Virus record (IMG/VR): IMGVR_UViG_3300009545_000018
Coordinates: 62,001 to 126,000 of that record
DNA length: 64,000 nt
Strand: one strand, 5' to 3'
Shown: positions 14,206 through 61,026 of the stretch, in pieces
Layout of the letters: each line of letters begins with the position of its first letter
How positions within the stretch are numbered: position 1 is the stretch's first letter
Program-made: the position numbers and the translations under genes
Notes under the pieces: model-generated
What the model was told of the DNA's origin: nothing
Databases searched by the model: none
Seen by the model: only the letters and a program-made list of their open reading frames with translations

Positions 14206-14679
14206 ATGAAGTATTCAAAAGAATTACTATCTAAACTAGTTTCTGAATGTACTACTGTTGCAGAGCTAATGAGAAAGTTAGGACTCCAACAATCTGGAGG
14301 AACACATTCATTTTTAACTAAAAGAATAAAATCATTTAGTATTGACACATCTCATTTTGTTGGTTCTGCTTTTAATGCGGGACTAAATCATGTAGGCGGT
14401 CCAGAGAAACTATGTTCAACAGATGTTTTAGTCCTAGATAGGCTTAACGGTCAAAGAGAGAAATCTTTTAGATTAAAGAGAGCATTATTAGAATCTAACA
14501 TAAAAGAAGAGTGTGAACAATGTGGTGTGAGTACTATTTGGAATAATAAACCAATTACACTTCATATTGATCATAGAGATGGTAATGGTCTAAATAATTG
14601 TATAGAAAATTTAAGGTTCCTTTGTCCTAATTGTCATTCTCAAACGGACAATTATGGATCTAAAAATATTGGAAAATAA
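14206..14679 (+). CDS. HNH homing endonuclease
   Basis: CEQC...LHIDHRDG...N..ENLRFLCPNCH. Confidence 0.9.
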   Translation: MKYSKELLSKLVSECTTVAELMRKLGLQQSGGTHSFLTKRIKSFSIDTSHFVGSAFNAGLNHVGGPEKLCSTDVLVLDRLNGQREKSFRLKRALLESNIKEECEQCGVSTIWNNKPITLHIDHRDGNGLNNCIENLRFLCPNCHSQTDNYGSKNIGK

Positions 14680-46212: not shown

Positions 46213-46302
46213 GGGGAAGTAGCTCAGCCGGCCAGAGCGCTTTACTGTTTTATAAAACGAATAGTGAAGAGGTCGATGGTTCAAATCCATCCTTCCCCAC
46301 CA
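46213..46302 (+). tRNA. tRNA with 20-nt anticodon loop, identity uncertain
   Basis: GGGGAAG/CTTCCCC+ACCA, canonical D and T arms; anticodon arm extended to about 11 bp. Confidence 0.75.
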
Positions 46303-46374
46303 TGAATCAAATGCAGATAAGATTACATTTAACAGTTAATTAAAAAAGCATCTTATCAATAATTTGTTGATTCA
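46303..46374 (+). ncRNA. scaffold-family ncRNA copy A
   Basis: TGAATCAA/TTGATTCA, GATAAGAT/ATCTTATC, ATGC and TACATT motifs. Confidence 0.7.
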
Positions 46375-46380
46375 TTTAAT

Positions 46381-46464
46381 GCCGTAGTTGGACAGTGTGG
46401 TGAGTCCAAGACGCTGTAAACGTCCCGGTAAACTTTGTAGGTTCGATTCCTACCTGCGGCACCA
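46381..46464 (+). tRNA. tRNA-Tyr(GTA)
   Basis: loop CT-GTA-AA, long variable arm, ACCA. Confidence 0.9.
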
Positions 46465-46653: not shown

Positions 46654-47622
46654 TTGAACTGTTATATATTCTGTATGATTGTCATACAGAAACGATCTTT
46701 TTCTTTAGAAGAGTTAAGAGAAATATTCAAAAGTTCATTGTCAAAGCAAGATGTTGCCATAAAGTTAGGTTTTACTTATAGTAATGGGAAAGTTTATAAA
46801 AAAATTGAGAAACTTTCTATTGAATATAATTTATCGACGGATCATTTTGATCCATTTTTAAGTCAAAGATTAAATACAAAATTTCCTAAAATAGAAAAAG
46901 AATGTCCTATATGCGGTAATTTATTTGAAACTAAACATGGACATCGTGATGAAAAAATTACTTGCTCAATATCATGCTCTAATACTTATTTTGCTCCTAG
47001 TAAACACACTGAATTATCAAATTTAAAAAGATCGTTAAAGCTTTTAAAAAATTCAAAAAATGAAACTGTCAATATAATAAAAGTTCGTAAAAAACGTAAA
47101 AAGAATTTTAAATTAAAAGCTGTTGTTTTATATATTAAGTCTTGTGAATTTTGTGATTATGATTTTGAAACTTATAATAAAAATAAAAGATTTTGCAATA
47201 TATCATGTCAAATCAAACATAATTGGGAAGATCCCAATTATCGTATTAATATTATAAATAAAGCTAATGAAAGAGTTACAAATGGAACCCATAATGGGTG
47301 GTCATCAAGATCAAAACTAAAACCTTCTTATGCTGAACAATATGTTATCAATCTTTTAGATGAGTTAAAAATAACAAATATTACTCGAGAATACAAAATT
47401 AACAAATGGTTTATTGATTTTGCTGATATAGATAGAAAATTAGCTTTAGAAATAGATGGTAAACAACATGAATTACCAGAACGTAAGGCTTCGGATCAAG
47501 TTAAAGATCAATATTTAAAAGATAATGGTTGGACCATTTTAAGAATAAAATGGAAAAAGATAACAGCAGAATTTAGAGAAGAATTAATAAAAGTTTTGCA
47601 AAATTTCACAAGGATCATATAA
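46654..47622 (+). CDS. homing endonuclease, Vsr/DUF559-like
   Basis: CPIC and CxxC Zn motifs, IDFAD..LALEIDGKQH..D..L..GWTILRIKW. Confidence 0.82.
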   Translation: MNCYIFCMIVIQKRSFSLEELREIFKSSLSKQDVAIKLGFTYSNGKVYKKIEKLSIEYNLSTDHFDPFLSQRLNTKFPKIEKECPICGNLFETKHGHRDEKITCSISCSNTYFAPSKHTELSNLKRSLKLLKNSKNETVNIIKVRKKRKKNFKLKAVVLYIKSCEFCDYDFETYNKNKRFCNISCQIKHNWEDPNYRINIINKANERVTNGTHNGWSSRSKLKPSYAEQYVINLLDELKITNITREYKINKWFIDFADIDRKLALEIDGKQHELPERKASDQVKDQYLKDNGWTILRIKWKKITAEFREELIKVLQNFTRII

Positions 47623-48319: not shown

Positions 48320-48397
48320 AGGCTTCTAGCTTAACTTTTAGAGCAAGGGACATAAAGAGTCCCGTGGATCTTGGTGTAAATCCAAGGGAGCCTGCCA
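48320..48397 (+). tRNA. atypical tRNA-like RNA (loop AT-AAA-GA)
   Basis: AGGCTTC/GGAGCCT+GCCA, GGGAC/GTCCC, T-loop TGTAAAT, D-loop lacks GG. Confidence 0.65.
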
Positions 48398-49079: not shown

Positions 49080-49143
49080 TGAATCAAATCCGTATAGGAA
49101 TACATTCGGAAAAAATAAATCTTATACACTACTTGTTGATTCA
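49080..49143 (+). ncRNA. scaffold-family ncRNA copy B
   Basis: TGAATCAA/TTGATTCA, GTATAGGA/TCTTATAC, TACATT. Confidence 0.7.
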
Positions 49144-49148
49144 ATTAT

Positions 49149-49225
49149 TGTCGATTAGCTCATCGTTAGAGCGCCCGGCCGTAAGAGTCTGGAGGTACTA
49201 GGTTCAATTCCTAGATCGACAACCA
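49149..49225 (+). tRNA. tRNA with irregular anticodon arm (Thr-CGT-like, uncertain)
   Basis: TGTCGAT/ATCGACA+ACCA, good D and T arms; loop region CCGTAAGAGT. Confidence 0.65.
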
Positions 49226-49591: not shown

Positions 49592-49666
49592 GTTCTGGTC
49601 GTCTAAATAATTAGGACATCTCCGCGAAAGGGGAAGATATTGGAGAATTACCAATCTGGAGCGCCA
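49592..49666 (+). ncRNA. non-canonical tRNA-like RNA
   Basis: GTTCTGG/CTGGAGC+GCCA, T-loop AGAATTA, anticodon loop GCGAAA. Confidence 0.6.
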
Positions 49667-49753
49667 TAAGTTAGTGGCTGGAAATCATTTAAGCGAGTTC
49701 AAATGCAATAACAGTCCGCCTAATTGCTCGTATATTAGGTAACTTAATTTTAT

Positions 49754-49830
49754 GCCCCTGTCGTCGTAAAAAGTCAGGACATCTCCAGTAATAGGAGAAG
49801 ATGTTGGAGAATTGCCAACTGGGGGTGCCA
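49754..49830 (+). ncRNA. non-canonical tRNA-like RNA, paralog of 49592-49666
   Basis: GCCCCTG/TGGGGGT+GCCA, TCTCC/GGAGA, T-loop AGAATTG. Confidence 0.6.
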
Positions 49831-50132
49831 AAGGCAAGTAAGGACCAGGAAGCCTTATGAGCTGCTGGTTTTTCATATAGGGAACTAGCCTGGTTAGTCC
49901 TATATGAGAACCAACCAATGTCTTTAAATAAAGAAATTTATATAAGGACACCATGATTAATTTGTGCAGCTGACTTATATTGGATTTCGCGATCTGATAT
50001 ATGAGTGCTGGAAAATACGGAAAGTTGGAAAACTGATGCACACCGTATAAGTTAACTAAATCACTAACTGTTATTATCTACGCGAATAGATAAAAACAAA
50101 GTAATTAGTTAATTATAATTAATCAAAAACTT

Positions 50133-50226
50133 TAGCAAATGCAGTAAGGATTACATTGGTTATAGTCAATCGAAAGATTGATGGTGGGTATCGATTCCCA
50201 CAGTATCTTTACAAAACTTGTTGCTA
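50133..50226 (+). ncRNA. scaffold-family ncRNA copy D
   Basis: TAGCAA/TTGCTA, GTAAGGAT/ATCTTTAC, TACATT; cargo GNRA hairpin plus GTGGG-TATCGATT-CCCAC. Confidence 0.7.
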
Positions 50227-50230
50227 TTAT

Positions 50231-50367
50231 TCCGAGGTACGTCTAATGGTAAGACACGCGGCTGTGGGAACTATAGGTTAATAATAAGTCCCGTTCGATT
50301 CGGGCAGTTCCAAGAATAACCGCGCGGTGGTAACACTTTGTAGGTTCGAGTCCTACCCTCGGAGCCA
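50231..50367 (+). tRNA. tRNA-Asn(GTT)-like gene with 51-nt insertion in the anticodon
   Basis: TCCGAGG/CCTCGGA+GCCA; CGCGG-CTGT[50266-50316]TAA-CCGCG. Confidence 0.75.
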
Positions 50368-50392
50368 TTATATTAAATAAAAGGAAAGTACT

Positions 50393-50554
50393 ATGCAAGT
50401 TCAAATACATCTTTACAATCAATCCAATCCTATTGTGTTGGAACATGTAACTAATGCTTATCAAAAAGGTGATTTTTATTGTGTTATGTTTGCTAGTAAA
50501 CTAGTTCAAAAGTTTCCAATTCAACATATATTTAGAATAATAGAAACTCCTTAA
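50393..50554 (+). CDS. small hypothetical protein (53 aa)
   Basis: AAGGA SD, MQVQIHLYNQSNPI... Confidence 0.55.
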   Translation: MQVQIHLYNQSNPIVLEHVTNAYQKGDFYCVMFASKLVQKFPIQHIFRIIETP

Positions 50555-50557
50555 TGT

Positions 50558-51330
50558 ATGATTTCAAAATTAACAATCAAATCTTATGGAGTGACAGTAA
50601 CTCTTCCCAGTGAAATTCTAATTTTAGAAGATTGTATCTGGGCTAAAACTGGTGAACATTTAGCTTTAGGAAAAGACAAAAATATTATGGGTAATGATTG
50701 TTTTATTGTCCTTAGAAAAAACGGAGTTGTTATTTCTGGACCTTCTCCTTTAATTCATTCGGTTGGAGCAAATAGTTTAATTTATCAAGAGTGTTCGGTA
50801 GAAAAATATTATAAAATGAAAGCATTTTTGTAATGATCAAATATGTTGATGATAACGGTAAAGAAAAAATTTTACCTGAAAAAATAGTTATACTAAAATG
50901 TCCTGATAGTTGGCTTATTGAGCCTGGAGATTATATAGAATTTATTCATACATATTATCTTCATATGAGGATCTCCAGCTTTGAAATCAAAGTTTTAAAA
51001 GGATATCATAAGAATAAAATATTTGATTTACTCTTTAGTCATTTATCTAAGATTGAATATGTAAGCATAGAAAAGTTTGAAAAACTAAAGGCGTTTGTTT
51101 AAATGGAAACCAAGTGGATTTTAGTAACACAACAAAACTCTGTTTACTATAATAAAATCTTAGAATTAAAAGAAGGTTGGACATCAACCATTTATAATGG
51201 GACTATTGTTTGGTTTATTGAGTCAGTAAATGGTCAAGTTAGACATTATCCGGATTGGTTTGAGTTAAACGATTTGCCAACACATACAGTAGTAACAAAG
51301 GATGCCCTTAATTTATTAGCCTTTTTATAA
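50558..51330 (+). CDS. array of three KAF-tag proteins (50558-50833, 50833-51102, 51103-51330)
   Basis: ends KMKAFL, KLKAFV, NLLAFL. Confidence 0.7.
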
Positions 51331-51336
51331 AAAACT

Positions 51337-51579
51337 TTAGATGAATGCCGCAATGGAATACATATACAACCGATAGCTGAATGTCGCAAGACATTCAATA
51401 TCTCCGATTTCATAAAAGAGATATGAACCAACCTAAAGGAATTCCTATAAGGATAAACTATGTGACTGACAAACTTGAAGCCAGTTAAAGCTCAAGTCCT
51501 CTATGGTATTATTAGGATAAGATATACTGTGCTATTGGATAAAATTAATCGCACTTTCTATTGCATTCTTGTCATCTAA
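51337..51579 (+). ncRNA. scaffold-family ncRNA copy G (large cargo)
   Basis: TTAGATGA/TCATCTAA, ATGCC, GCAATGGAA/TTCTATTGC, TACAT, CTTG. Confidence 0.62.
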
Positions 51580-51591
51580 TTAACTTTTCAT

Positions 51592-51720
51592 TTAAATGAA
51601 TGCCGATTCGGGAATACATTAAACACAAAGATACTGCAGCATGTGCCAGGCTAATCCACATGTACCTTAGGAGTACTCAGGGTAAAGTGTACCGACTTCT
51701 CAATCACCTTTGTCATTTAA
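51592..51720 (+). ncRNA. scaffold-family ncRNA copy H
   Basis: TTAAATGA/TCATTTAA, ATGCC, GATTCGGGAA/TTCTCAATC (imperfect), TACATT, TTTG. Confidence 0.62.
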
Positions 51721-51721
51721 C

Positions 51722-52962
51722 ATGAATTACTTAAAACACACATTAGATAACGGCACAGTATTAGAAATACCAGAAGAATTTATGGTATTAGATAATTTAC
51801 CATCAGAAGATCTACATTACAAAGTAGAATTAATTCTTGATTTTATTAGAGGCTGGGTATTTAAAATAACCCATATAAATGGTTTAGAACTAACTCAATA
51901 TAAAGAAGATCCAACATGGATTTGTTATTTTAGTCCAGAAAAGATTTTTAATAAAAAAATTATACCATGTTCACTTGAAAAATTTAACAATATGAAAGCA
52001 TTTTTATAATGTCAAAAGAAGAAAAACCATTATCACCTTATGAGATAAGAAGATTAGGTCATTGCAAAGAAACAGAGCAGTGTGTTGATGATCTATATTG
52101 TAATTGTCCTTGTTTACCTTGTTCTAAGCAAGATTGTTTTAGACCAGGATGTAAATGTGGTAGAACTCATCCATATAAAAATTAATGTACTTACATATCC
52201 ATGATAAAGATGTTCCATCTTCTATTTTAGTTTTAGAAGACTCAAAAACTCACACCATTGAAAAGAATTCTCATTTTGTTTTTAGAAAAATTAAGTATAA
52301 TGAATATTGTGTTGATTTTTTTAATGGTAAAGATAATCGTTATTCTTATGCAAGATATTCAGAAGATGATTTATATCGTATGTTTTTTGATGGCAAATTA
52401 AAATATAAAGAATTTTCTTTAGCCCAGTTTAATAAAATAAAAGCATTTTTATGAAATATTATATTATTGAGGATACAGTAGTTCCAAGTGAGTTCATTAT
52501 AATTCATGATACAGATTTATGTAGAATTTATAATATTTATCCAGAGTTTAATAGAAATATTTATACTCATAAGAATTTTTTTGATTATATAAGCTACGAT
52601 CTTGATTATAATTTTATTTCGATTGCTACCATGCCAGGCAGTCAATTACTAAGTTATATTGATAATAATAAGTTATTTCCAATAGAAAAGTTTAATAGTT
52701 TAAAGGCTTTCTTATGAAATATATTCAAACTGCTAAATATAATTATCCAGAAGAAATATTTGTAACACAAAGTTTCTTTAGACACGAGTGGACTAATAAA
52801 CACTTGGTATTAAAACAATATAATGAATATGTATTAAGTGTATTTTTAATAAATGGGGAAGAGCCCTCACATCCAATGGCTATTACCAATAATTTCATTC
52901 ATGAGGCTAATTTTTTAGAAATGTCTTTAGAAAGATATTTAAAGATTAAATCTTTCTTATAA
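51722..52962 (+). CDS. four KAF-tag proteins (51722-52009, 52185-52454, 52451-52717, 52714-52962) and a Cys-rich 58-aa ORF (52009-52185)
   Basis: ends NMKAFL, KIKAFL, SLKAFL, KIKSFL; overlapping start/stops. Confidence 0.7.
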
Positions 52963-52985
52963 TAACTTGATATATAGTAATTCAT

Positions 52986-53059
52986 GCCTTCATCGTTCAA
53001 TGGTAGGACGCTGGATTGTCACTTCAGTAACAGCGGATCGTAACCGCTTGGAGGCGCCA
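52986..53059 (+). tRNA. tRNA-Asp(GTC) with atypical T-loop
   Basis: GCCTTCA/TGGAGGC+GCCA, TT-GTC-AC, T-loop ATCGTAA. Confidence 0.85.
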
Positions 53060-53066
53060 TTATTAT

Positions 53067-53142
53067 CCGCTATGAGTCTCTTGGTTGAGCTGAAGGTTCT
53101 TATAAAGCTTTTGGACAAGTTCAAATCTTGTATGGCGGACCA
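53067..53142 (+). tRNA. degenerate tRNA-like element
   Basis: CCGCTAT/ATGGCGG+ACCA, ACAAG-TTCAAAT-CTTGT; weak D and anticodon arms. Confidence 0.5.
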
Positions 53143-53197
53143 TGAGGAATATTCCTCACTTTGCACATGGTATCCATGTGATAATTTAGGAGCACTC

Positions 53198-53476
53198 ATG
53201 TTAGATAATAGAGATGGTTATATTTGTCCCGATCAGCGTGTTGGATTTAATAATCATTCAGGTTTGAATTTTTCTGATATATCTTCAGAAGAATATCGAA
53301 TTTATGAATTTGAAAGCGGAAGATCAATCTTAATAAATAAACCATTAAGATTAAATGTCTCACCAAGTGGTGGACATAGGGTATTTGATGAAGATAAAGT
53401 ATCTCATTATATTCCTAAAGGTTGGATTCATCTTAAATGGAAAGCCAGAGAAGGTCAACCTAATTTTGTGAAATGA
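53198..53476 (+). CDS. hypothetical phage protein
   Basis: AGGAG SD before ATG 53198; DISSEEYRIYEF..SGGHRV..SHYIPKGW; the track's earlier start overlaps tRNAs. Confidence 0.7.
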   Translation: MLDNRDGYICPDQRVGFNNHSGLNFSDISSEEYRIYEFESGRSILINKPLRLNVSPSGGHRVFDEDKVSHYIPKGWIHLKWKAREGQPNFVK

Positions 53477-53516
53477 ATTTATCAAGCAATAATATTAAGT
53501 TATTATTGCTTTGACT

Positions 53517-53586
53517 ATGGACAAATTAGATAAGGATTACATTTTATTGGAAAAACAAACATCTTTGTCAACTACTTGTTGTCCAT
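53517..53586 (+). ncRNA. scaffold-family ncRNA copy E
   Basis: ATGGACAA/TTGTCCAT, GATAAGGAT/ATCTTTGTC, TACATT. Confidence 0.7.
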
Positions 53587-53589
53587 TAT

Positions 53590-53666
53590 GGTACATAGGC
53601 GAATCTAGTGAACGCAAAACCCTGAAGAGGTTTGGAGCCCAGAGCGTAACTTGGGATGTACCACCA
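53590..53666 (+). tRNA. tRNA-Phe(GAA) with atypical T-loop
   Basis: GGTACAT/ATGTACC+ACCA, AAACC-CTGAAGA-GGTTT, T-loop AGCGTAAC. Confidence 0.8.
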
Positions 53667-53782
53667 AGAAAGGTAGCGCCTTTCAGCCTGCTCACATGGA
53701 CGAAACTGTGACGTTCCCTCTTGGCTGTATAGCTCAAGTAGTAAAAGGGACAGCCGGTTCACCTGGTTGGAAACGGTGATAA

Positions 53783-53859
53783 AGTCATCTAGTTTAATGG
53801 TAAAACGCCATCACATTTATGTGCCGGCGGAGATCTGGGTTCGAGTCCCAGGATGATTT
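53783..53859 (+). tRNA. degenerate tRNA with expanded anticodon loop
   Basis: AGTCATC/GATGATT, canonical D and T arms, 13-nt loop, no CCA. Confidence 0.55.
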
Positions 53860-53862
53860 CTA

Positions 53863-54013
53863 TGAAAACAAATGCCCGTACAAGGATTACATTCATTATA
53901 GGAACGTGAAGAAAGTTCGATTCTTTCCGCAGCGACCAAACTAAAAACAATTGCTGCGTGGTGTATTGGTTAACACACGAAAAAAACATCTTTGTCAATT
54001 TTTGTTGTTTTCA
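53863..54013 (+). ncRNA. Y RNA-like ncRNA: scaffold copy F with circularly permuted tRNA domain
   Basis: TGAAAACAA/TTGTTTTCA, ACAAGGAT/ATCTTTGT; inside: T arm, CGCAGCG-ACCA, linker, TGCTGCG, D arm. Confidence 0.78.
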
Positions 54014-54033
54014 ATTATTTAAATAGGTGAAAC

Positions 54034-54366
54034 ATGAAATGTAAGATTCATCCAAAATATAAAGCCATATATCAGCCTAGGAAAACTAATAAGTTTCCAG
54101 ACGGTTGTATGGAATGTATTAAAATTTTTAACAAAAAACATAAAGTTTTTCTCTGTACAAGGAATCTTAGTAAAAATAATAATTTGCTTTTTAAAAAGGG
54201 TAAACATTATCAATTTATTTGTAAACAAAAAGTTATTAGTCATATGCCTTTTTCCAAATCACCGTATGATTATTTAATATATATTCGAAATGAAAGAGGG
54301 GATTACTCTTTTTTTAGTAAAGATAAAAATTTTCCTTATTTTTGGATAAAAGATTATTTCGAATAA
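54034..54366 (+). CDS. hypothetical protein
   Basis: AGG SD, MKCKIHP. Confidence 0.5.
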   Translation: MKCKIHPKYKAIYQPRKTNKFPDGCMECIKIFNKKHKVFLCTRNLSKNNNLLFKKGKHYQFICKQKVISHMPFSKSPYDYLIYIRNERGDYSFFSKDKNFPYFWIKDYFE

Positions 54367-54372
54367 CACTAT

Positions 54373-54449
54373 CGACCTCTAGCTCATTTGGTTAGAGCGA
54401 CCGCCTGATACGCGGTAGGTGCGGGGATCATAGCCCCGGGGGTCGACCA
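54373..54449 (+). tRNA. tRNA-Ile(GAT) with atypical T-loop
   Basis: ACCGC-CTGATAC-GCGGT, CGGGG-ATCATAG-CCCCG, ACCA. Confidence 0.87.
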
Positions 54450-54483
54450 TTAACAATATAATAATTTGAATTAGGAACTCTAT

Positions 54484-55011
54484 ATGTGGACAAAAGAAGA
54501 TCAAAAAAAATCAGACCAAGCGTTTAGAGAAAGACGAAGAGCGCGTACACATATTGAAACGCCAATCAGTAAAATTTGTTCTGGATGTTTAATAGATAAA
54601 CCAGCTAGTGAATTTACAAGAGACAAAATCTCTAAAGATGGTTTAAAATTTCATTGCAAAACTTGTACTAAAAAAGAAGGCGATGCTTAGAAAAACAAAA
54701 ATTGGTTTAAAAAATTGTTACATACCGCAAAATCAATTTCGAAAAAATATAATCTTTTATTTGATTTAGATGAAGATTTTATAATTGGTTTATTTAATAA
54801 ACAAGATAGAAAATGTTTTTATCTTGGAATAGATTTAGAACCAGCATTTAATAGAAGAAAATTAAATTCTCCATCATTAGATAGAATAGATTGCAATAAA
54901 GGATATACTAGGGATAATGTAGTTTTATGTTCACAATTTGCCAATTTAGGTCGGTGTGATGTTCCTTTTGAAGAATTTAAAAATTTTTGTAACAAATTAT
55001 TAAATAATTAA
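54484..55011 (+). pseudogene. HNH-type homing endonuclease interrupted by one in-frame TAG
   Basis: CSGC..CKTC domain in frame with SLDRID..GY..NV domain; TAG at 54688-54690. Confidence 0.7.
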
Positions 55012-55032
55012 TATATTGACACTATTGGAAGG

Positions 55033-55827
55033 ATGGTTACTATGAATACTAGTTATTTTCAAGTTTGTAAATGTCATTGTCATATTTCTAAGAATGTCAA
55101 GCACATTATGGCTTGTTGTTTTAATTGTAGCATTTGTGATAAGAATATTGTAAATGTTTATTTTACTTCGCACAAAAAAGCATGTGAAGAAGAAAAGAAG
55201 CAATTATTAGAAAAAATAACAAAAGAATTTAATGAAAGCACAAATAAGGATCATGGCGACAACAATTCATGAATTAAAAAATTGGTTCTTAAAGGGTAAG
55301 ACAAAGGGAGCTACACATATGATTATTGTTTGCTCTACTTTTGATTGGGAAGATTTTCCAATTTATGTTATGCCAAGCCAAGATGTCAAAAAAGAATTTG
55401 ATTTACAATCTAAAAAAGAGATGCAAAAGATAATGGAAGTTTATAATCTTAATAAAGATATTAGTGCTCAATTAAACCAATTTCGAACAATGGAGTTTTA
55501 ATGGACAATTTAATGTCAGACTTAAGACAGTCAGTAGCTTTATTTAAACACTCTTTATCTTCTTTTATTTTAAAGAAAGAGGTCTTTTCCATTGTTGATG
55601 GGTTGTCGTATCAACAATATTGTTTACAAGAAGCAATCTTTTATTTAGTTGAAATGGAAAGAGCCGCAAAAACCTTATTGCATTTATCATTGAATGATCA
55701 AAAACAAATTATGTTTTGGGCAATTCAAATGAGAGATGAAATGCAAAGAATCTTAAAAAATGATTTTCATACCATTTATGAGATGTTTTTGACCGATAAT
55801 GAGACGAGAGTAATTAATGCGTATTAA
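55033..55827 (+). CDS. three hypothetical proteins (55033-55272 Cys-rich, 55253-55501, 55501-55827)
   Basis: downstream of TTGACA-N16-TACTAT at 55016-55043; coupled ORFs. Confidence 0.5.
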
Positions 55828-56289
55828 GATAGAAAAAGCAAATAATAAAGCTAAATGTCGTGGACTTAAATGTAAAAAATTACCAGAATTTATCAATCGT
55901 AAAGGTAGAATAAGAAAAGACACTAGTTGCGCTGTTGTTAGTATAGCTAGTGCAGGTGGTGGAGCTACCGCCTTTTATTGTAGAGATTGTATTGATCAAA
56001 TTTATATGGATATGAAAATGGCTTTGGATCCAAAATTATGGATATTTAAATGAGAAATATTTTATATATTAAAGTGGAGCCTAATCCTGGTGGTAATGCT
56101 CCATGTTATTATAAAAATTGTAGTAATAATCCAGATTTAATAAATAAAGATGGTTCTATTAAAACAGGAACTTTAAGAGCTAGAATAGAAAATTCTTTCT
56201 ACTGTAAAGAATGTATTCCGAAAGTTTATAAGGATTTATGCTTTCAAATAAAGAGAGAATTAGATCCTAAGTTGTGGGCATTTAAATAA
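55817..56289 (+). CDS. two paralogous Zn-finger proteins (55817-56053, 56050-56289)
   Basis: FYCxxCI and C-termini LDPKLWIFK / LDPKLWAFK. Confidence 0.65.
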
Positions 56290-56290
56290 T

Positions 56291-56374
56291 GGGTTCGTCG
56301 CATAGTGGTATTGCACCTGGCTCTTAACCAGACGTAGAAATGCAACGTCGGTTCGATTCCGACCGGACCCACCA
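56291..56374 (+). tRNA. tRNA-Lys(CTT) with long variable arm
   Basis: CT-CTT-AA, 14-nt variable region, ACCA. Confidence 0.88.
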
Positions 56375-56387
56375 ACATATTAAATAT

Positions 56388-56461
56388 GGGCTTATAACTC
56401 AATGGTAGAGTAGCTGGCTTTTAACCAGTTAATCAGAGTTCGACTCTCTGTGAGCCCACCA
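56388..56461 (+). tRNA. tRNA-Lys(TTT)
   Basis: CT-TTT-AA, canonical, ACCA. Confidence 0.92.
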
Positions 56462-56484
56462 ATCCAATTAGGAGATTTATTAAT

Positions 56485-56907
56485 ATGATTGATTCATTAA
56501 AAGATTTAGAATTAGATAAAATTGATTTAAAAGCCGAAGATTATTTAGAAAAAATTAATTCTATTCTTCAAGAAAAACTTGGAGTAGGATTTAAAGAGAT
56601 CAAATCTCCTTTAATAGACTATGTTAAGTCTCATGCCGAAGAGTTATCATTATCATTTCCTAATATTGCGCCCCATGGTGACTATAGTAAAATGATTGAG
56701 GATAATGATGGTATGTCAAATTTTCTAAAGTCTTTAGAGAATTTAGATGATTGGAAAGTCTTATCAATAGATGAAGATACTAAATTTAATTTATTAAAGT
56801 TTTCTTTCGTATCTATAGCAGTAGATGATGGTGATTCCTTGGAAGGATTTACTTATCTATCTAAAGATGGTAAAATTAAACATTCTTTTGCTCAATATGT
56901 CGGATGA
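56485..56907 (+). CDS. acidic hypothetical protein
   Basis: AGGAG SD. Confidence 0.55.
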   Translation: MIDSLKDLELDKIDLKAEDYLEKINSILQEKLGVGFKEIKSPLIDYVKSHAEELSLSFPNIAPHGDYSKMIEDNDGMSNFLKSLENLDDWKVLSIDEDTKFNLLKFSFVSIAVDDGDSLEGFTYLSKDGKIKHSFAQYVG

Positions 56908-57209
56908 AAGACCTTACTGACGAAGAGATTGCAGAAGGTTGCGTCATGACAAGTGATGGGACAAAAAGATGGTATAATAAGGAAAACATATTGCATCGTT
57001 TAGATGGTCCTGCCATATTGTGTACCAATGGCAGTTATGCTTGGTATAAAGATGGTAAAAGACATCGTTTAGATGGTCCGGCTTATTATCTAAAAATCGC
57101 TTATAAATCATTAGAAATTATAAAAGAGTGGTATTTTGAAGGTAAAAAAATAGAATGTAGTTCTCAGGAAGAATTTGAAAAACTAATCAAACTAAAAGCA
57201 TTTTGGTAA
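56904..57209 (+). CDS. HRLDGPA-repeat protein with KAF tag
   Basis: two HRLDGPA repeats; ends KLKAFW. Confidence 0.75.
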   Translation: MKDLTDEEIAEGCVMTSDGTKRWYNKENILHRLDGPAILCTNGSYAWYKDGKRHRLDGPAYYLKIAYKSLEIIKEWYFEGKKIECSSQEEFEKLIKLKAFW

Positions 57210-57212
57210 AAC

Positions 57213-57770
57213 ATGGTAAATGATTTAAAAACAAAAATAATAAACTTATATGGCGGACCAGGCGTTGGTAAGAGTACTTCTGCAGCTTATCTTTATTTTT
57301 TATCTAAAATAAATAAACAAAATGCTGAATTAGTTCGAGAATATGCCAAGGATTGGGTATATCAGGACAGAAAGATTGGTCCCTACAATCAAATATATTT
57401 CTTGGGAAAACAAATTCATAAAGAGAGTTTACTATATGGAAAAGTAAATTATATAATTACTGACTCTCCCATTATGATGAGTGTATATTATGCTTATCTA
57501 TATTGCGAAAAGGACTTGGCTGATGGAGTTTGTTGTGCAGCTGAAGCTTTTTATGAGCAAGCCAGAAAAGATGGTCATCAACATATCCATGTTATGTTAA
57601 GTCGAGCACATCCTTATGATCCTAATGGTAGGTATCAATCTGAAAAAGAGGCGGTTCAAATTGATAATGGAGTTAGAAAACTTTTGTCAGATTTAGATAT
57701 TCCTTTTATAGAGTGCAAAAGTGACGAAAATGATTTATCTGAATTAATGATGCATTTACAAAAACTATGA
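57213..57770 (+). CDS. P-loop ATPase/kinase (AAA_28/NadR-like)
   Basis: GGPGVGKST, VREYAK, ITDSP. Confidence 0.8.
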   Translation: MVNDLKTKIINLYGGPGVGKSTSAAYLYFLSKINKQNAELVREYAKDWVYQDRKIGPYNQIYFLGKQIHKESLLYGKVNYIITDSPIMMSVYYAYLYCEKDLADGVCCAAEAFYEQARKDGHQHIHVMLSRAHPYDPNGRYQSEKEAVQIDNGVRKLLSDLDIPFIECKSDENDLSELMMHLQKL

Positions 57771-58135
57771 GAAAAAATTTTATATTAGAAACATTATTAG
57801 AGAGTGGGGAAGTAGTTTGGAAACCCCGCGGCAACTCTATGACTCCTAAAATTAATTCTGGAGATCAAGTTTTAATAAAATCTTCAAATCAATTAATACT
57901 ATTAGTTGGTGATATTGTGTATGTTAAGGTAAAGAGTAATTATTATTTGCATCTAATATCAGCAATTGATGGTGATAGATATCAAATTTCCAACAATCAT
58001 GGTTTTGTAAATGGGTGGGTTCATCGAAATAATATCTTTGGAATATGTATTAAGATAGAAGATAAAGTTCTCTTGAATGGTGAAGATTTAAAACTTAGAG
58101 AAGAAGCATTTACCTCTGAACAAAGTAAAGCTTGA
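57767..58135 (+). CDS. S24/S26 peptidase-like protein
   Basis: GNSMTPKINSGD motif; second catalytic position appears to be His. Confidence 0.65.
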   Translation: MRKNFILETLLESGEVVWKPRGNSMTPKINSGDQVLIKSSNQLILLVGDIVYVKVKSNYYLHLISAIDGDRYQISNNHGFVNGWVHRNNIFGICIKIEDKVLLNGEDLKLREEAFTSEQSKA

Positions 58136-58223
58136 TATAAGATTTAATGTTCAGTAGATCTTAAAAGTTAATTTAGAGTCCAAATCTAAATCTTCTCGAA
58201 TAAATTTAATGATATATAACTAT

Positions 58224-58297
58224 GGGGCTGTGATATAATGCGATTATGTTGCCCTTGCAAGGCAAAAAAATGGGTTGGATTCCCATCAGCTCCACCA
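58224..58297 (+). tRNA. tRNA-Ala(TGC)
   Basis: G3:T70 pair, CT-TGC-AA, ACCA; T-loop TTGGATT. Confidence 0.9.
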
Positions 58298-58326
58298 ATT
58301 TATTATAATAATTAATCCGTCATTTC

Positions 58327-58761
58327 ATGATATATGAATTGGTCATGAGACCATTATTAACAATAAACGCTTACGGTTCTGTAATTGACAATAGCAGAAA
58401 AAATTATGCTGGAAATTATACTGGAGCTATGGGACCTATAGGACCTACGGGTCCAACAGGTCCAACAGGTCCTATAGGGGGCGCTTTTATCTCAGCTTCT
58501 ATACCAGCTATTGCTACAAATTCAACATCCGGTGCCTCTCTTGTTTGGAATGGTTCTGGAGCTGGATGGATCTCCTCATATATTTCTGGAGCTACTGCCG
58601 CTTCAGGATACGGAAAGTCTCTAACTCACGTGAATCCTTCAACTTCTGTCTCAGTTGGACCCAAATATATTTCTATATTAGGTGGTTCTTTTTATAAAGA
58701 CCAACCAGATGATTATCCAAAATACCGAAATATAATAAGCGGAAGCTTTATCAATAAATAA
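58327..58761 (+). CDS. Ser/Gly-rich protein with short collagen-like (GPT)n repeat
   Basis: GPIGPTGPTGPTGPIG. Confidence 0.55.
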   Translation: MIYELVMRPLLTINAYGSVIDNSRKNYAGNYTGAMGPIGPTGPTGPTGPIGGAFISASIPAIATNSTSGASLVWNGSGAGWISSYISGATAASGYGKSLTHVNPSTSVSVGPKYISILGGSFYKDQPDDYPKYRNIISGSFINK

Positions 58762-58835
58762 TCTTTCTACCATAACTAATGGTAATAAAAGAGAATAACA
58801 TCATGCAACTTAATTAATCTTTTAAGGGAATAAGT

Positions 58836-59711
58836 GTGATGTCTAATAAAGCTATAGAATCAGAAGATCTTCCAGAATTAGAGTTGATTGAAATGGACAA
58901 GCATTCTGAAGAAAAAATAAAGAGAATAAACAAAGACATTTTGGGATTACAGACCGAAAGTGACTTAGTACTTTTTAAACATATTCCAGAAATAGTAAAT
59001 AAATTAGATTATTTATCAAATAATTTTAATATTCTTAGAGACGATCATACTGATACTAATAGATTAGTACGTAAGATGTATTATGATCAAATACCATCTT
59101 TACATTCTAAAATAGATAGTCTGAATGATAAGTTAGATCTTCTTTGTAGTAAAATAGATAAGTTAATAAACAAATGATAGTATATTTAATTATCTTGATA
59201 TTGGCAATAGCTACTTCGATTTGTGCAGCAATGTATTGGACTGTTAAAATTGAGTTAAAACATTTACAAGATAATTTTCAGATTAAACTATTAGCCAAAC
59301 ATATTAGTTTAACAAGAGAAATAGAATCCCTTACTAAGATTAGGGCTAAGGAATTAGATTTTACTGAACTAGATAAAATCATAGAAAATTTAAGAAGGCT
59401 CCACAATGGATAATGATCTATTAGAGCGCGCGCTCGACAAACAAGAACTTTTTGAAAAGTCTCTTTTAGAATTAAGAGATATTTCTTATGCTCTAAAACT
59501 AAGTGTAAACACTCAAGAATTAGAGAATAGATATTTAAAGCAATCTGTAGAAGAGCTTAAAAAGATTCTTGAAAAAGAAGCAGAAAAAAGAGAACAAGAA
59601 AAACAGGCAGCTAAATCATCAGCTACCACAGTTAAAACTGCATTAATTACTGGCATATTAGGTTTTATTACTGCTACAGTAGTTGCAATTATTTCTTTGT
59701 TCAAACATTAA
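58836..59711 (+). CDS. three coiled-coil/TM proteins (58836-59177, 59174-59413, 59406-59711)
   Basis: heptad patterns; N- or C-terminal TM helices. Confidence 0.55.
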
Positions 59712-59727
59712 TAACTATTAAGTTGTC

Positions 59728-60108
59728 ATGCCAACACAAAAAGAAATATTAAATTCTTTGCGTTGCCCAATTTGTCAATCACAAATTGATGGAGTATCTT
59801 ATTCAATAAGATTTTATTGTGCCCAAGATCAAAAACATTATAATGTTTGGATTAAAGATGGTAAATTAAAAAAAGAAACTATTAATCTTTATGATTTAAA
59901 AAAATTATTAAAGTATGAATTAACGCAGACTTATGAGACTAATGGTGTTAAAACGATAATTATATTAGAAAATATTGATGCAGAGGGTAGGGAAATTTTC
60001 TCATTTGAGGAAAATTCTTATACAGCTAATCTTGCTTTATTTGATTTTAGAAATTTTAATTATGATAAAGCTATAAATAAAATAAAAACATTTTTAGTAT
60101 TTGGATAA
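59728..60108 (+). CDS. CPxC protein with extended KAF-like end
   Basis: CPIC...KIKTFLVFG. Confidence 0.6.
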   Translation: MPTQKEILNSLRCPICQSQIDGVSYSIRFYCAQDQKHYNVWIKDGKLKKETINLYDLKKLLKYELTQTYETNGVKTIIILENIDAEGREIFSFEENSYTANLALFDFRNFNYDKAINKIKTFLVFG

Positions 60109-60129
60109 TTTGTCTCTTAGGAGAATGTC

Positions 60130-61026
60130 ATGTCAAAGAAAAATTTAGCCAGAACAGCCATAGAAGGTGGTAGGGTTAACACTTGGGAACGTCGCCATTC
60201 CCATAATCAAGAACGCAGATCAATTAGAGAGTTTTGTCAAAAAGTTTTGATTGATCCAGAACTAGCTGAAGAAATTGATATTGAAGAAAAAGATTTAATT
60301 TGTAAAGAATTTCATGATAAATTAAATCCAATGTTTCGTTGGCTTCGTTCTAAAGTAGGTCAACCTTGGTCAGAAGTTCGTTCAGAAATAACTAAGAAAT
60401 TTGATGCTCGCACTACTGCTGGGCGTCATATTTTATATGACCATTTGTTATCTTCTGTTAATGATACTCAAAGTGGTTTTGATCAATATGGAAACATTAT
60501 CGATCCTACTATTGAAGTTATTGGTAAGAGAAAAGAAATTAAATATTATTTTGGTCGTCCTTATAATGAATTTTATGTTAATCAAGAAGGTATTCTTTGC
60601 AAAGTTATTCGAGAAAAATATCCTTATGCATTTGTTACAGAAATTGAATATAAAGAAGCTGGTGATTGGTTAAATGGAAGAATGATTGTAGACAAGGGTG
60701 GCGTCTTATTTTGGTGCTGCCCGATGGATGGCATTTGGAAAGCTTCGTGGTTTGACCCTAATGGTACTGTTCCACAATCTTATAAATTATTCTTGGGTTA
60801 TTATTTATTTGATAATGGCTTACATAAAGCTCCCGGATTTATAGGCTTTGACTGGGAAGAGACTTCAAACTTTACTGGCAAAATTCATAGTGATTACTGG
60901 AATTTAATTGAAAACCCATTCTCTTTTAAACAAAGAGGCTCATTATCTGAAGATGAATTAAAATTCTTTAAATCACTAAAGAAAAAGTTGCAAAAAGATA
61001 TTTTAGACTATACTAAAGGCAGATGA
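60130..61026 (+). CDS. hypothetical phage protein
   Basis: 298 aa, AGGAG SD. Confidence 0.6.
   Translation: MSKKNLARTAIEGGRVNTWERRHSHNQERRSIREFCQKVLIDPELAEEIDIEEKDLICKEFHDKLNPMFRWLRSKVGQPWSEVRSEITKKFDARTTAGRHILYDHLLSSVNDTQSGFDQYGNIIDPTIEVIGKRKEIKYYFGRPYNEFYVNQEGILCKVIREKYPYAFVTEIEYKEAGDWLNGRMIVDKGGVLFWCCPMDGIWKASWFDPNGTVPQSYKLFLGYYLFDNGLHKAPGFIGFDWEETSNFTGKIHSDYWNLIENPFSFKQRGSLSEDELKFFKSLKKKLQKDILDYTKGR

What the first reader, a model, noticed from the sequence alone, without database searches (positions are those of the whole stretch)
49592..54449. The near-universal T54-A58 T-loop pair is swapped to A54-T58 in five tRNA genes
Seen: T-loops ATCGTAA (Asp 52986), ATCATAG (Ile 54373), AGCGTAAC (Phe 53590), AGAATTA (49592) and AGAATTG (49754) all have A at 54 and T at 58. 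In the last two, A56 goes with loss of the D-loop GG and a T that could supply the 19-56 pair (inference). Established: U54-A58 is a nearly invariant reverse-Hoogsteen pair, and U54 is the TrmA/TrmFO methylation site. The repeated double change suggests the fold is kept while sequence-specific recognition is avoided (host tRNases, modification enzymes, integrases or homing nucleases targeting tRNA 3' halves). tRNA scanners may miss these genes.
Basis: partly seen in the sequence, partly recalled or inferred. Interest (0 to 1): 0.75.

Follow-up and report, generated by a model that had tools for sequence, protein, structure and literature searches.

The report
Inverted T-loop pair in phage tRNAs
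Three tRNA genes of a 448-kb soil phage carry the normally invariant T-loop pair U54-A58 the other way round (A54-U58), a compensated change that recurs in phage tRNAs but almost never in cells and that may protect them from enzymes that read the T-loop.

Summary
The window lies in a 447,763-bp, 31% GC phage from a rhizosphere metagenome with about 38 tRNA genes. A54/T58 is real in tRNA-Asp(GTC) (ATCGTAA), tRNA-Ile(GAT) (ATCATAG) and tRNA-Phe(GAA). The Phe loop is the 7-nt AGCGTAA, not the 8-nt AGCGTAAC.

The other two loci (49592, 49754) are a conserved pair of tRNA-like RNAs. Their "anticodon" loops are 6, 7 or 10 nt and lack U33, so the 54/58 numbering is only an analogy there.

The swap is far beyond chance. 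In 374 unique phage tRNAs, T58 occurs only with A54 (14 A/T, 9 A/A, 0 T/T; p = 2e-19), and A54 goes with purine-60. Syntenic relatives carry canonical TTCAATT (Asp) and TTCGAAT (Ile) in the orthologous genes, so 54 and 58 changed together and the swap is derived. The Asp T-arm sits in 12 tRNAs of viral contigs. In 596 Gb of prokaryote genomes it sits in 3, two of them in dense tRNA arrays.

The elbow partners are kept, so the fold is probably kept. The mechanism is inferred: loss of U54, and of U55 in Phe, removes the UUC motif needed by T-loop nucleases such as prokaryotic Schlafen (Cash), and removes the m5U54 site. Neutral compensated drift is a serious rival. I found no prior report.

The parts
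52986..53059 (+). tRNA-Asp(GTC), the only Asp tRNA of the phage. D-loop AATGGTA keeps G18 G19. 3' end GCCA.
   Evidence: ARAGORN. Rfam tRNA 50.4 bits. The ortholog in L249 is identical over nt 1-25 but has T-arm GCCGG-TTCAATT-CCGAC.
53037..53043 (+). T-loop ATCGTAA of tRNA-Asp: A54 T55 C56 G57 T58 A59 A60.
   Evidence: Read directly and parsed by ARAGORN. The same 17-nt T-arm lies in 12 tRNAs of other viral contigs.
54373..54449 (+). tRNA-Ile(GAT), the only AUY decoder of the phage. D-loop ATTTGGTTA. 3' end ACCA.
   Evidence: ARAGORN. Rfam 49.9 bits. MFE is a clean cloverleaf. Orthologs in L249 and L251 have TTCGAAT.
54427..54433 (+). T-loop ATCATAG of tRNA-Ile(GAT): A54 T55 C56 A57 T58 A59 G60.
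53590..53666 (+). tRNA-Phe(GAA), the only GAA tRNA called (ARAGORN also calls a Phe(AAA) at 48320). D-loop AATCTAGTGAA lacks GG and has AG. 3' end ACCA.
   Evidence: MFE cloverleaf. ARAGORN only at -ps85. No Rfam tRNA hit. The ortholog at L249 4519-4595 has compensatory changes in acceptor, anticodon and T stems. It shares the upstream cassette of the Tyr and Leu tRNA genes.
53643..53649 (+). T-loop AGCGTAA of tRNA-Phe: A54 G55 C56 G57 T58 A59 A60, closed by G53-C61 (53642/53650). One T of 53651-53652 is bulged.
   Evidence: Register fixed by A52-T62 -> C52-G62 in the ortholog. The same loop type is AGCGTTA in L018 tRNA-Pro and AGCATTA in L094 tRNA-His.
49592..49666 (+). tRNA-like RNA A: cloverleaf ending GCCA, 6-nt 'anticodon' loop GCGAAA, 'T-loop' AGAATTA (49644-49650), D-loop without GG.
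   Evidence: No Rfam family. Not a decoding tRNA.
49754..49830 (+). tRNA-like RNA B, a paralog of A: 7-nt loop AGTAATA with G at 33, 'T-loop' AGAATTG (49808-49814).
   Evidence: The ortholog at L249 1401-1478 keeps the T-arm and acceptor with compensatory changes but has a 10-nt loop.
53522..53589 (+). Upstream cassette (…AAGGATTACAT…CATCTTTGTCAA…CTTGTTG…). It is also found before tRNA-Tyr (46381), tRNA-Leu (49149), the interrupted tRNA (50231) and the ORF at 54034. Likely a promoter or processing signal.
   Evidence: Function is inferred.

Best explanation
Shown.
- Asp(GTC), Ile(GAT) and Phe(GAA) are otherwise intact elongator tRNA genes of a huge phage.
- In them the tertiary pair 54-58 of the T-loop is inverted, from U54-A58 to A54-U58, and pyrimidine-60 is replaced by a purine.
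- The change is compensated, since 54 and 58 always change together.
- It is derived in this phage lineage. It recurs independently in many phage and tRNA-array tRNAs and is almost absent from ordinary cellular tRNA genes.
- The partners that build the tRNA elbow are kept (G18 G19 with U55 C56) or co-vary (A18 G19 with G55 C56 in Phe).

Inferred.
- The L-shape, and therefore charging and decoding, are preserved. The loop is a U58 variant of the A54/A60 'initiator-type' T-loop.
- The benefit is the loss of U54, and in Phe also of U55. The RNA no longer shows the UUC (T-Psi-C) sequence and cannot receive m5U54.
- T-loop-reading host proteins would then fail on it. The first candidates are T-loop tRNases of defence or competition systems: Schlafen/Cash type, which needs U54 and U55, and CdiA-CT(E479) type.
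- This would be the T-loop counterpart of the anticodon-loop changes by which phage tRNAs escape anticodon nucleases.

The two AGAATT loci are a separate thing: a conserved family of tRNA-like RNAs of unknown function.
For: Covariation.
- 374 unique phage tRNAs, seeds excluded: 346 T/A, 14 A/T, 9 A/A, 3 C/A, 1 G/G, 1 A/G, 0 with T58 without A54. Fisher p = 2e-19.
- Position 60 is T or C in 342 of 346 canonical loops. It is A or G in 23 of 24 A/T loops and 15 of 15 A/A loops.
- Same stem, four loops, scanned in IMG/VR. A/T gives 22 hits, 12 in tRNAs. A/A gives 16 hits, 7 in tRNAs. T/T gives 2 hits, none in a tRNA.

Orthologs.
- A syntenic relative, L248/L249, is 73-90% identical. It has Asp TTCAATT and Ile(GAT) TTCGAAT.
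- A second relative, L251, has Ile TTCGAAT.
- Three distant kin of 412-506 kb have 41 of 41 tRNAs with T/A, including 4 Asp and 5 Ile(GAT).
- Phe keeps AGCGTAA in the relative, with compensatory stem changes.

Phage restriction.
- The exact Asp T-arm gives 94 hits in 596 Gb of prokaryote genomes, about the number I estimate for chance (roughly 70). Only 3 hits lie in tRNAs: two in arrays of 9-11 tRNAs and one a lone tRNA-His. A fourth contig with 18 tRNAs carries two more A54/T58 loops.
- Contigs that hold one swapped tRNA hold more: 10 of 106 non-seed tRNAs. Three randomly reached jumbo phages have 0 of 55.
- L260 has 9 of 31 tRNAs without U54.

Integrity of the genes.
- D-loop GG is present in 352 of 360 tRNAs with U55-C56. 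It is absent in 8 of 9 with G55-C56, most of which carry AG instead.
- Asp(GTC) and Ile(GAT) are the only such tRNAs called in the genome. Phe(GAA) is the only GAA tRNA, beside an odd Phe(AAA) at 48320.

Candidate readers of the loop.
- CbCash cuts 5' of U55, targets UUC, and single U54 or U55 mutations abolish cleavage. Whether phage tRNAs are targeted is stated to be open (PMC13462974).
- CdiA-CT(E479) cuts the T-loop (PMC9086364).
- The phage carries three RNA-ligase-family genes, as tRNA-repair phages do.
Against: - No expression, charging, structure or cleavage data. No RNA run was listed.
- Only 3 of about 38 tRNAs here are swapped, plus Glu(CTC) and Ser(GGA) with A54/A58. At most about a third are non-U54 in any contig seen. 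A broad T-loop nuclease such as CbCash would still destroy the rest, so the argument needs a nuclease with tRNA-specific reach.
- Most jumbo phages sampled have none.
- A viable intermediate, A54-A58, exists, so a neutral path is open.
- The host and its defence systems are unknown.
- A:U is not among the trans Watson-Crick/Hoogsteen pairs seen at this site in solved structures (PMC2615604). The geometry, and even whether the pair forms as assumed, is unknown.
- The sample of phage tRNAs is partly seeded on the trait, and all numbering rests on ARAGORN parses.
Confidence: 0.4

Rival explanations
1. Neutral compensated drift. Phage tRNAs act briefly and at high copy, so they are under weaker constraint on modification-dependent stability. 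U54-A58 drifts to A54-A58, which is tolerated as in eukaryotic initiators, and then to A54-U58, which is simply another stable solution. No recognition is being avoided.
For: - All steps of the path are seen: T/A, A/A, A/T, plus C/A and G/G.
- The trait is sporadic within genomes, 3 of about 38 here. It is absent from most jumbo phages sampled.
- tRNA genes turn over quickly between the window phage and its relative. For example, the Lys genes are unrelated in sequence.
Against: - The swapped tRNAs are not generally degraded. All other conserved positions and tertiary partners are intact.
- Swapped genes cluster in particular phages: 10 of 106 against 0 of 55 and 0 of 41.
- Three separate tRNAs flipped in one lineage at different times. 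Phe flipped before the split from L249, Asp and Ile after it.
- In Asp and Ile the changes pile up in the T-arm and anticodon stem (16 of 29 and 16 of 27 positions). The first 25 nt are identical and the flanks are 83-90% identical. That looks like targeted replacement rather than clock-like drift.
Confidence: 0.33
2. Tuning of the tRNA itself rather than escape from a nuclease. The A54/R60 loop changes elbow rigidity or removes dependence on host TrmA, TruB or TrmI. The phage tRNA then folds and works unmodified, or behaves differently on the ribosome, as A54/A60 do in eukaryotic initiator tRNA.
For: - A54 with purine-60 is the signature of the eukaryotic initiator T-loop. There A54, A60, m1A58 and A20 rigidify the T/D-loop contact (PMC3950347).
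- The exact initiator loop ATCGAAA occurs in phage elongator tRNAs.
- U54 is the m5U site and A58 the m1A site (PMC7912444). Both are lost.
Against: - The D-loops lack the A20 partner. They read GGTA or GGTTA.
- Nothing explains why only some isoacceptors would need this.
- No modification data exist.
Confidence: 0.17
3. The swapped genes are decaying pseudogenes or non-translational decoys.
For: - Three of the five loci escape standard tRNA detection.
- A and B really do lack a usable anticodon loop.
Against: - Asp and Ile(GAT) are the only tRNAs called for their anticodons, and Phe(GAA) is the only GAA tRNA.
- Cloverleaves are perfect and CCA is encoded.
- Compensatory substitutions against orthologs show purifying selection on structure.
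Confidence: 0.05
4. A DNA-level cause. The change removes or creates a site for a restriction enzyme, integrase or homing endonuclease. For example, GTTCGAA loses TCGA and TTCGAA, and GATC appears.
For: By inspection, G53-A54-T55-C56 reads GATC, and the canonical TTCGAA/TCGA is lost in ATCGT loops.
Against: - The strict 54/58/60 covariation and the D-loop covariation are RNA-structure signals. A DNA-site model predicts no such pairing.
- Loops such as ATCATAG and AGCGTAA do not share a DNA site.
- Most tRNAs of the same phage keep TTCGA.
Confidence: 0.03

Closest known systems
Eukaryotic initiator tRNA T-loop (A54, A60; A54-A58 pair)
   Same: - A at 54 and a purine at 60 in place of U54 and pyrimidine-60.
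- U55, C56 and R57 are kept.
- The identical loop AUCGAAA occurs in some phage tRNAs found here.
   Different: - Position 58 is U, not (m1)A, so the pair is A-U rather than A-A.
- The carriers are bacterial-virus elongator tRNAs (Asp, Ile, Phe and others).
- The D-loop partner A20 is absent.
T-loop / UA_handle RNA motif and its known pair variants
   Same: Same topology: a 1-5 tertiary pair stacked on a G-C pair, two bulged residues, and a turn that docks a D-loop base.
   Different: In solved structures the pair is U:A 92%, C:A 4%, and A:A, G:A, C:C and G:G 1% each (PMC2615604). A:U is not listed. The phage tRNAs show C:A, A:A and G:G as well, but A:U is their commonest variant.
Phage tRNAs that escape host tRNA nucleases through anticodon-loop changes (e.g. 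T5 tRNAs against PARIS or retron-Eco7; Azam et al. 2024, PMC11555353, cited)
   Same: A phage-encoded tRNA that keeps its decoding role while altering the nucleotides a host nuclease reads.
   Different: The site would be the T-loop, a feature common to all tRNAs. No nuclease-tRNA pair has been tested for it.
T-loop-cleaving tRNases: prokaryotic Schlafen Cash (type III CRISPR) and CdiA-CT(E479)
   Same: They cut within U54-U55-C56. CbCash loses activity on U54 or U55 single mutants. These are exactly the positions changed here.
   Different: These are the possible selective agents, not relatives of the finding. The phage has no Schlafen-domain gene and its host is unknown.
Mitochondrial and other 'bizarre' tRNAs with degenerate elbows; bacterial tRNA gene arrays
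   Same: - Departures from U54, A58, G18 and G19.
- Most of the few 'cellular' occurrences found here lie in dense tRNA arrays.
   Different: Here the elbow is not lost. Each change is matched by a partner change, and the rest of the tRNA is canonical.

Membership tests
Canonical elongator tRNA (Rfam RF00005): Asp 52986 and Ile 54373 | Cloverleaf with 7-bp acceptor stem, 7-nt anticodon loop with U33, D-loop G18 G19, T-loop U55 C56, encoded or addable CCA, and a score over the Rfam gathering cut-off. | tested here: met
   ARAGORN default calls. Rfam 50.4 and 49.9 bits against a cut-off of 29.
Canonical elongator tRNA (Rfam RF00005): Asp, Ile, Phe | U54-A58 reverse-Hoogsteen pair and pyrimidine-60. 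| tested here: not met
   A54, T58 and A60 or G60 in all three. This is the finding itself.
Canonical elongator tRNA (Rfam RF00005): Phe 53590 | Score over the Rfam cut-off; G18 G19 with U55 C56. | tested here: not met
   No RF00005 hit at E <= 10. D-loop has AG, T-loop has G55 C56. The cloverleaf, U33, GAA anticodon, ACCA end and compensatory changes against the ortholog are present.
Canonical elongator tRNA: loci 49592 and 49754 | 7-nt anticodon loop with U33 and a conserved anticodon. | tested here: not met
   Loops of 6, 7 and 10 nt in A, B and the ortholog. C or G at 33. No Rfam hit.
Structured tRNA-like RNA (loci 49592 and 49754) | Acceptor, D and T helices supported by covariation; 3' NCCA. 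| tested here: met
   15 pairs, 100% paired in 3 sequences, 4 pairs with changes on both sides. Slid controls are 36-60% paired. With only three sequences this is modest support.
Eukaryotic-initiator-type T-loop | A54 and A60. | tested here: met
   A54 in all three. A60 in Asp and Phe, G60 in Ile. Purine-60 in 23 of 24 A/T loops.
Eukaryotic-initiator-type T-loop | A58 (m1A58) pairing with A54; A20 in the D-loop; CAU anticodon and initiator role. | tested here: not met
   T58. D-loops read …GGTA. Anticodons are GTC, GAT and GAA.
T-loop / UA_handle motif | [quoted passage not shown] | not testable with these tools
   Sequence covariation supports a 54-58 contact. The geometry needs a structure, and A:U is not among the reported variants.
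Phage tRNA as counter-defence against a tRNA nuclease | A host nuclease cleaves the host or canonical tRNA, and the phage variant resists and rescues infection. | not testable with these tools
   Only circumstantial: restriction to phage, and the known U54/U55 requirement of CbCash.
Bacterial Y RNA (YrlA) tRNA-like module (considered for A and B because an Rsr/Ro60-like gene lies at 37824-39404) | Match to the Rfam Y-RNA models; canonical T-loop and D-loop mimic plus a Ro-binding helix. | tested here: not met
   No Rfam family at gathering score in the window or at E <= 10 locally. The loops are not canonical.

The most novel reading that the evidence does not exclude
A54-U58/purine-60 T-loops, and the A54-G55 form with a matching A18 in the D-loop, are a dedicated phage counter-defence. 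The invariant T-Psi-C sequence is rewritten so that the fold is kept, which makes chosen phage tRNAs invisible to T-loop-cutting immune nucleases (Schlafen/Cash and similar). The trait would then mark phages whose hosts use such nucleases. It would also give the first natural example of an inverted 54-58 pair that still supports translation.
Probability: 0.25. Interest if true: 0.8.

Novelty: new variant of a known kind. Interest (0 to 1): 0.62.

Why it matters
- U54-A58 is treated as a near-universal feature of tRNA, and the only textbook exception is the eukaryotic initiator. A recurrent, compensated inversion in working phage tRNAs shows that the T-loop has another viable sequence solution. 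It also offers a natural set of variants for testing what TrmA, TruB, TrmI, RNase P, the ribosome and T-loop nucleases actually read.
- It bears directly on a question left open in 2026: whether phage tRNAs escape T-loop-cleaving Schlafen nucleases.
- In practice, the G55 forms are missed by ARAGORN at default settings and by Rfam. Phage tRNA repertoires, here the only Phe(GAA), are therefore under-called.

Tried and rejected
- Megablast of the region and blastn of tRNA-Asp against 50,697 cultured phage records found no match. tRNA-Ile gave only generic 5'-half matches. A 34-nt T-arm query gave only chance hits. The trait was therefore not found in cultured phages by these queries, which is not a census.
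- LUZ24-like Pseudomonas phages matched a neighbouring Asp-Pro cluster, but their tRNA-Asp has the canonical TTCGAAT.
- The exact Ile T-arm gave 4 viral hits, none in a tRNA.
- Patterns for the A/B T-arm and the Phe T-arm in viral and metagenome contigs gave only chance hits, plus the window's own record and the one relative. No further homologs of A/B or of the AGCGTAA Phe were found.
- The search for related loci with a single protein found nothing. The relatives came from the search for homologous proteins plus look-up of encoding contigs. Two relatives could not be read because their sample files were too large.
- For expression, one DNA run holds the sequence, probably the source sample. 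No RNA run was listed.
- I considered and rejected an 8-nt T-loop for Phe, a Y-RNA identity for A/B, and a phage-encoded Schlafen nuclease that spares the phage's own tRNAs (most of its own tRNAs keep UUC).
- I also considered that the shared 17-nt T-arm is a horizontally moving cassette. This is not needed. Swapped loops sit on many different stems, and the flanks show no shared sequence.

Full report
**Context**

The window is bases 62001-126000 of a 447,763-bp IMG/VR virus record with 31% G+C, judged complete by CheckV. One DNA run of a rhizosphere metagenome holds it.

ARAGORN finds 37 tRNA genes in the genome, all on one strand, including two tRNA(CUA). The window also encodes:
- a lysyl-tRNA synthetase at 14679-16298;
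- an Rsr/Ro60-like protein at 37824-39404.

The genome has three RNA-ligase-family genes and no Schlafen-domain gene. The finding lies in the densest tRNA region.

**The observation**

Two of the five loci are ordinary tRNA genes in every respect but the T-loop.
- Asp(GTC), 52986-53059, has T-arm AGCGG-ATCGTAA-CCGCT.
- Ile(GAT), 54373-54449, has CGGGG-ATCATAG-CCCCG.
- Both are found by ARAGORN at default settings and by Rfam at about 50 bits. Both keep the D-loop GG, U33 and an encoded CCA.

The third locus, 53590-53666, folds as a cloverleaf with anticodon GAA and 3' ACCA.
- ARAGORN calls it only at 85% threshold, and Rfam does not report it.
- Its ortholog in a related phage differs by compensatory changes in the acceptor stem (A-T to G-C), the anticodon stem (C-G to T-A) and the T stem (A52-T62 to C52-G62).
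- The T-stem change fixes the register. G53-C61 closes a 7-nt loop AGCGTAA, and one T is bulged in the 3' strand.
- A54 and T58 stand, and U55 is G as well.

The last two loci (49592-49666 and 49754-49830) are paralogs ending GCCA.
- With the ortholog in the relative, all 15 pairs of the acceptor, D and T stems are paired in all three sequences. Four pairs changed on both sides. Slid controls give 36-60% paired.
- The 'anticodon' loop is 6, 7 or 10 nt, position 33 is C or G, and neither U55, C56 nor a D-loop GG exists. No Rfam family matches.
- They are a conserved family of tRNA-like RNAs. Calling the A and T of AGAATTR '54' and '58' is an analogy that cannot be tested here.

**Is the swap more than chance?**

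I collected tRNAs from four sources: the whole genome, contigs reached through T-arm patterns, randomly reached jumbo phages, and relatives of this phage.

Among 374 unique phage tRNAs with 7-nt T-loops (seed arms excluded), the 54/58 combinations are:

| 54/58 | Count |
|---|---|
| T/A | 346 |
| A/T | 14 |
| A/A | 9 |
| C/A | 3 |
| G/G | 1 |
| A/G | 1 |
| T58 without A54 | 0 |

Fisher's exact test gives p = 2e-19.

A third position joins in. Position 60 is a pyrimidine in 342 of 346 canonical loops. It is a purine in 23 of 24 A/T loops and in 15 of 15 A/A loops.

As a controlled test I scanned IMG/VR for the Asp T-stem carrying each loop:

| Loop on the Asp T-stem | Hits | Hits in tRNAs |
|---|---|---|
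| A54/T58 | 22 | 12 (Asp, Glu, Ala, Thr) |
| A54/A58 | 16 | 7 |
| T54/T58 | 2 | 0 |

**Orthologs**

Through the AAA_28 kinase gene at 57213-57770 I found a syntenic relative, L248 = L249, with 73-90% nucleotide identity over 49750-61027.
- Its tRNA-Asp is identical to the window's over the first 25 nt, but its T-arm is GCCGG-TTCAATT-CCGAC.
- Its tRNA-Ile(GAT) is likewise identical over 25 nt and over the last 12, but has CCGGG-TTCGAAT-CCCGG.
- A second relative, L251, has CCGAG-TTCGAAT-CTCGG.
- Three more distant kin of 412-506 kb have 41 of 41 tRNAs with T54/A58, among them four Asp and five Ile(GAT).

So 54 and 58 changed together, and the swap is derived in the window's lineage. The Phe swap predates the split from L249. 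The Asp and Ile swaps are younger.

The differences between orthologs are concentrated in two places:
- Asp: 16 of the 29 positions of anticodon stem plus T-arm differ, against 2 of 45 elsewhere.
- Ile: all ten anticodon-stem positions and 6 of 17 T-arm positions differ.

**Distribution**

- The exact Asp T-arm has 94 matches in 596 Gb of prokaryote genomes. I estimate about 70 for a random 17-mer.
- Only three of these matches lie in tRNAs. Two are in arrays of 9-11 tRNA genes and one is a lone tRNA-His. A fourth contig with 18 tRNAs in 3.2 kb carries two more swapped loops.
- Judged from the chance hits, the viral collection is roughly a tenth of that size (my estimate), yet it gives 12 tRNA hits.
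- Contigs with one swapped tRNA tend to have more: 10 of 106 non-seed tRNAs. L018 has 6 of 14 without U54 and L260 has 9 of 31.
- Three randomly reached jumbo phages have 0 of 55.
- The trait is thus rare overall, confined to phage-like contexts, and clustered in particular phages.
- In this genome there are five default or near-default calls with A54: Asp, Ile and Phe (A/T), and Glu(CTC) and Ser(GGA) (A/A).

**Is the fold kept?**

This is an inference, but it has support.
- tRNAs with U55-C56 have a D-loop GG in 352 of 360 cases.
- Those with G55-C56 lack it in 8 of 9 cases. Most of them, including the window's Phe, carry AG at the matching place, as if G18-U55 had become A18-G55.
- Those with U55-U56 lack GG in 16 of 16 cases.

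The phage tRNAs therefore vary their elbow by partner changes, not by decay.

The A54/purine-60 signature is that of the eukaryotic initiator T-loop, where A54, A60, m1A58 and A20 form a rigid network (PMC3950347). The identical loop ATCGAAA occurs in phage elongators. The window's loops are its U58 variant.

In solved RNA structures the pair at this site is U:A in 92%. The rest are C:A, A:A, G:A, C:C or G:G, and A:U is not listed (PMC2615604). The full-text library has no paper with 'A54-U58' or its variants. A 2021 review names the eukaryotic initiator as the special case (PMC7912444).

**Why?**

The constant element is the loss of U54. Position 58 is U or A, and 60 follows.
- U54 is the m5U site, and with U55-C56 it forms the T-Psi-C sequence.
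- A 2026 study shows that prokaryotic Schlafen nucleases linked to type III CRISPR (CbCash) cut tRNAs 5' of U55 and target UUC. They are inactive on single U54 or U55 mutants. The study leaves open whether phage tRNAs are hit (PMC13462974).
- A contact-dependent-inhibition (CDI) toxin, CdiA-CT(E479), also cuts the T-loop (PMC9086364).

An A54-U58 loop, and still more an A54-G55 loop, would remove those determinants while keeping the fold. This is the same logic as anticodon-loop escape by phage tRNAs.

I rank this first at about 0.4. The trait is restricted to phage, clustered, repeatedly derived, and tied to position 54.

The main weakness is that only a minority of tRNAs in any phage are changed, which a broad nuclease would not spare. 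Neutral compensated drift (0.33) and tuning of the tRNA itself (0.17) remain open. Nothing here measures expression, charging or cleavage.

**Verdict**

- For the two tRNA-like RNAs it is only nominal.
- The covariation is strong and the swap is derived.
- The functional reading is plausible but untested.
- It is a new variant of a known kind.

Noticed in passing
window 49592-49830 and 49831-50060: Two paralogous tRNA-like RNAs ending GCCA, with non-tRNA loops. About 230 nt of non-coding sequence follows them. It holds long stretches identical to the relative and folds into several hairpins (MFE -63 kcal/mol). It may be one processed RNA unit. Function unknown.
   Followed up: partly
window 50231-50364: A tRNA-like gene (Rfam 39.3 bits) whose acceptor, D and T arms are normal but whose anticodon region carries an insertion of about 60 nt. 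The insertion holds a second T-arm-like hairpin (CCCG-TTCGATT-CGGG). ARAGORN reads it as an intron.
   Followed up: no
window 53897-53980: What looks like the 3' half of a tRNA (T-arm GAAAG-TTCGATT-CTTTC, acceptor strand CGCAGCG, ACCA) lies about 15 nt upstream of a matching 5' half (TGCTGCG plus a D-arm with GG). The order is permuted. The stretch is not conserved in the relative. Permuted gene, split tRNA or rearrangement remnant: undecided.
   Followed up: partly
window 46308-46384, 49085-49153, 50136-50230, 53522-53589, 53875-54030: A repeated upstream cassette (…AAGGATTACAT…CATCTT(T)ATCAA…CTTGTTG…) precedes several tRNA genes and one ORF. There are three exact copies of the 11-mer. Probably a phage promoter or processing signal.
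   Followed up: partly
window 52986-53059 and 54373-54449 against L249 3948-4021 and 5321-5397: Between close relatives the acceptor and D arms of Asp and Ile(GAT) are identical, while the anticodon stems are almost wholly replaced by compensating pairs (7 of 12 and 10 of 10 positions). The anticodon stem, like the T-arm, seems to be a hot spot.
   Followed up: partly
window 48320-48397; L253 1482-1559 and 3718-3794; L254 7010-7083 and 17454-17528: A second class of odd elbows in this phage family: T54-G55 loops (TGTAAAT, TGCAAAT, TGCGATC, TGAAAAT) with D-loops lacking GG and often carrying AG. This suggests a G18-U55 to A18-G55 tertiary covariation.
   Followed up: partly
window 46213-46302: A high-scoring tRNA (Rfam 59.5 bits) that ARAGORN reads with an 8-nt anticodon loop (anticodon GTTT) and a 17-nt variable region. 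Either an Asn tRNA with an extra loop base or a four-base decoder.
   Followed up: no
genome 212881-213035 (outside the window): Two adjacent tRNA(CUA) genes, so the phage may read TAG as a sense codon. The ORFs of the window read well under code 11, and I named no other code.
   Followed up: no
window 50558-52962 and 56904-57209: A run of small paralogous ORFs (75-101 aa), most ending in …K(A/S)FL, between the tRNA genes. The relative has them too. No family assigned.
   Followed up: no
window 14679-16298, 37824-39404, 46654-47622; genome 44638, 140899, 201161: The phage carries a lysyl-tRNA synthetase, an Rsr/Ro60-like protein (TROVE plus vWA) and three RNA-ligase-family genes. By eye only, the ORF at 46654-47622 inside the tRNA region looks like a zinc-finger endonuclease. 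Together these make a large RNA-handling kit.
   Followed up: partly
L260 4821-8230 (IMGVR_UViG_3300037452_000118): An unrelated 129-kb viral contig with 31 tRNA genes in 3.4 kb. Nine lack U54 (ATCGAAG, ATCGTGG, ATCAATA, CTCGAAA, GTCGGAA, ATCGAAA). It is the richest natural set of T-loop variants seen here.
   Followed up: partly
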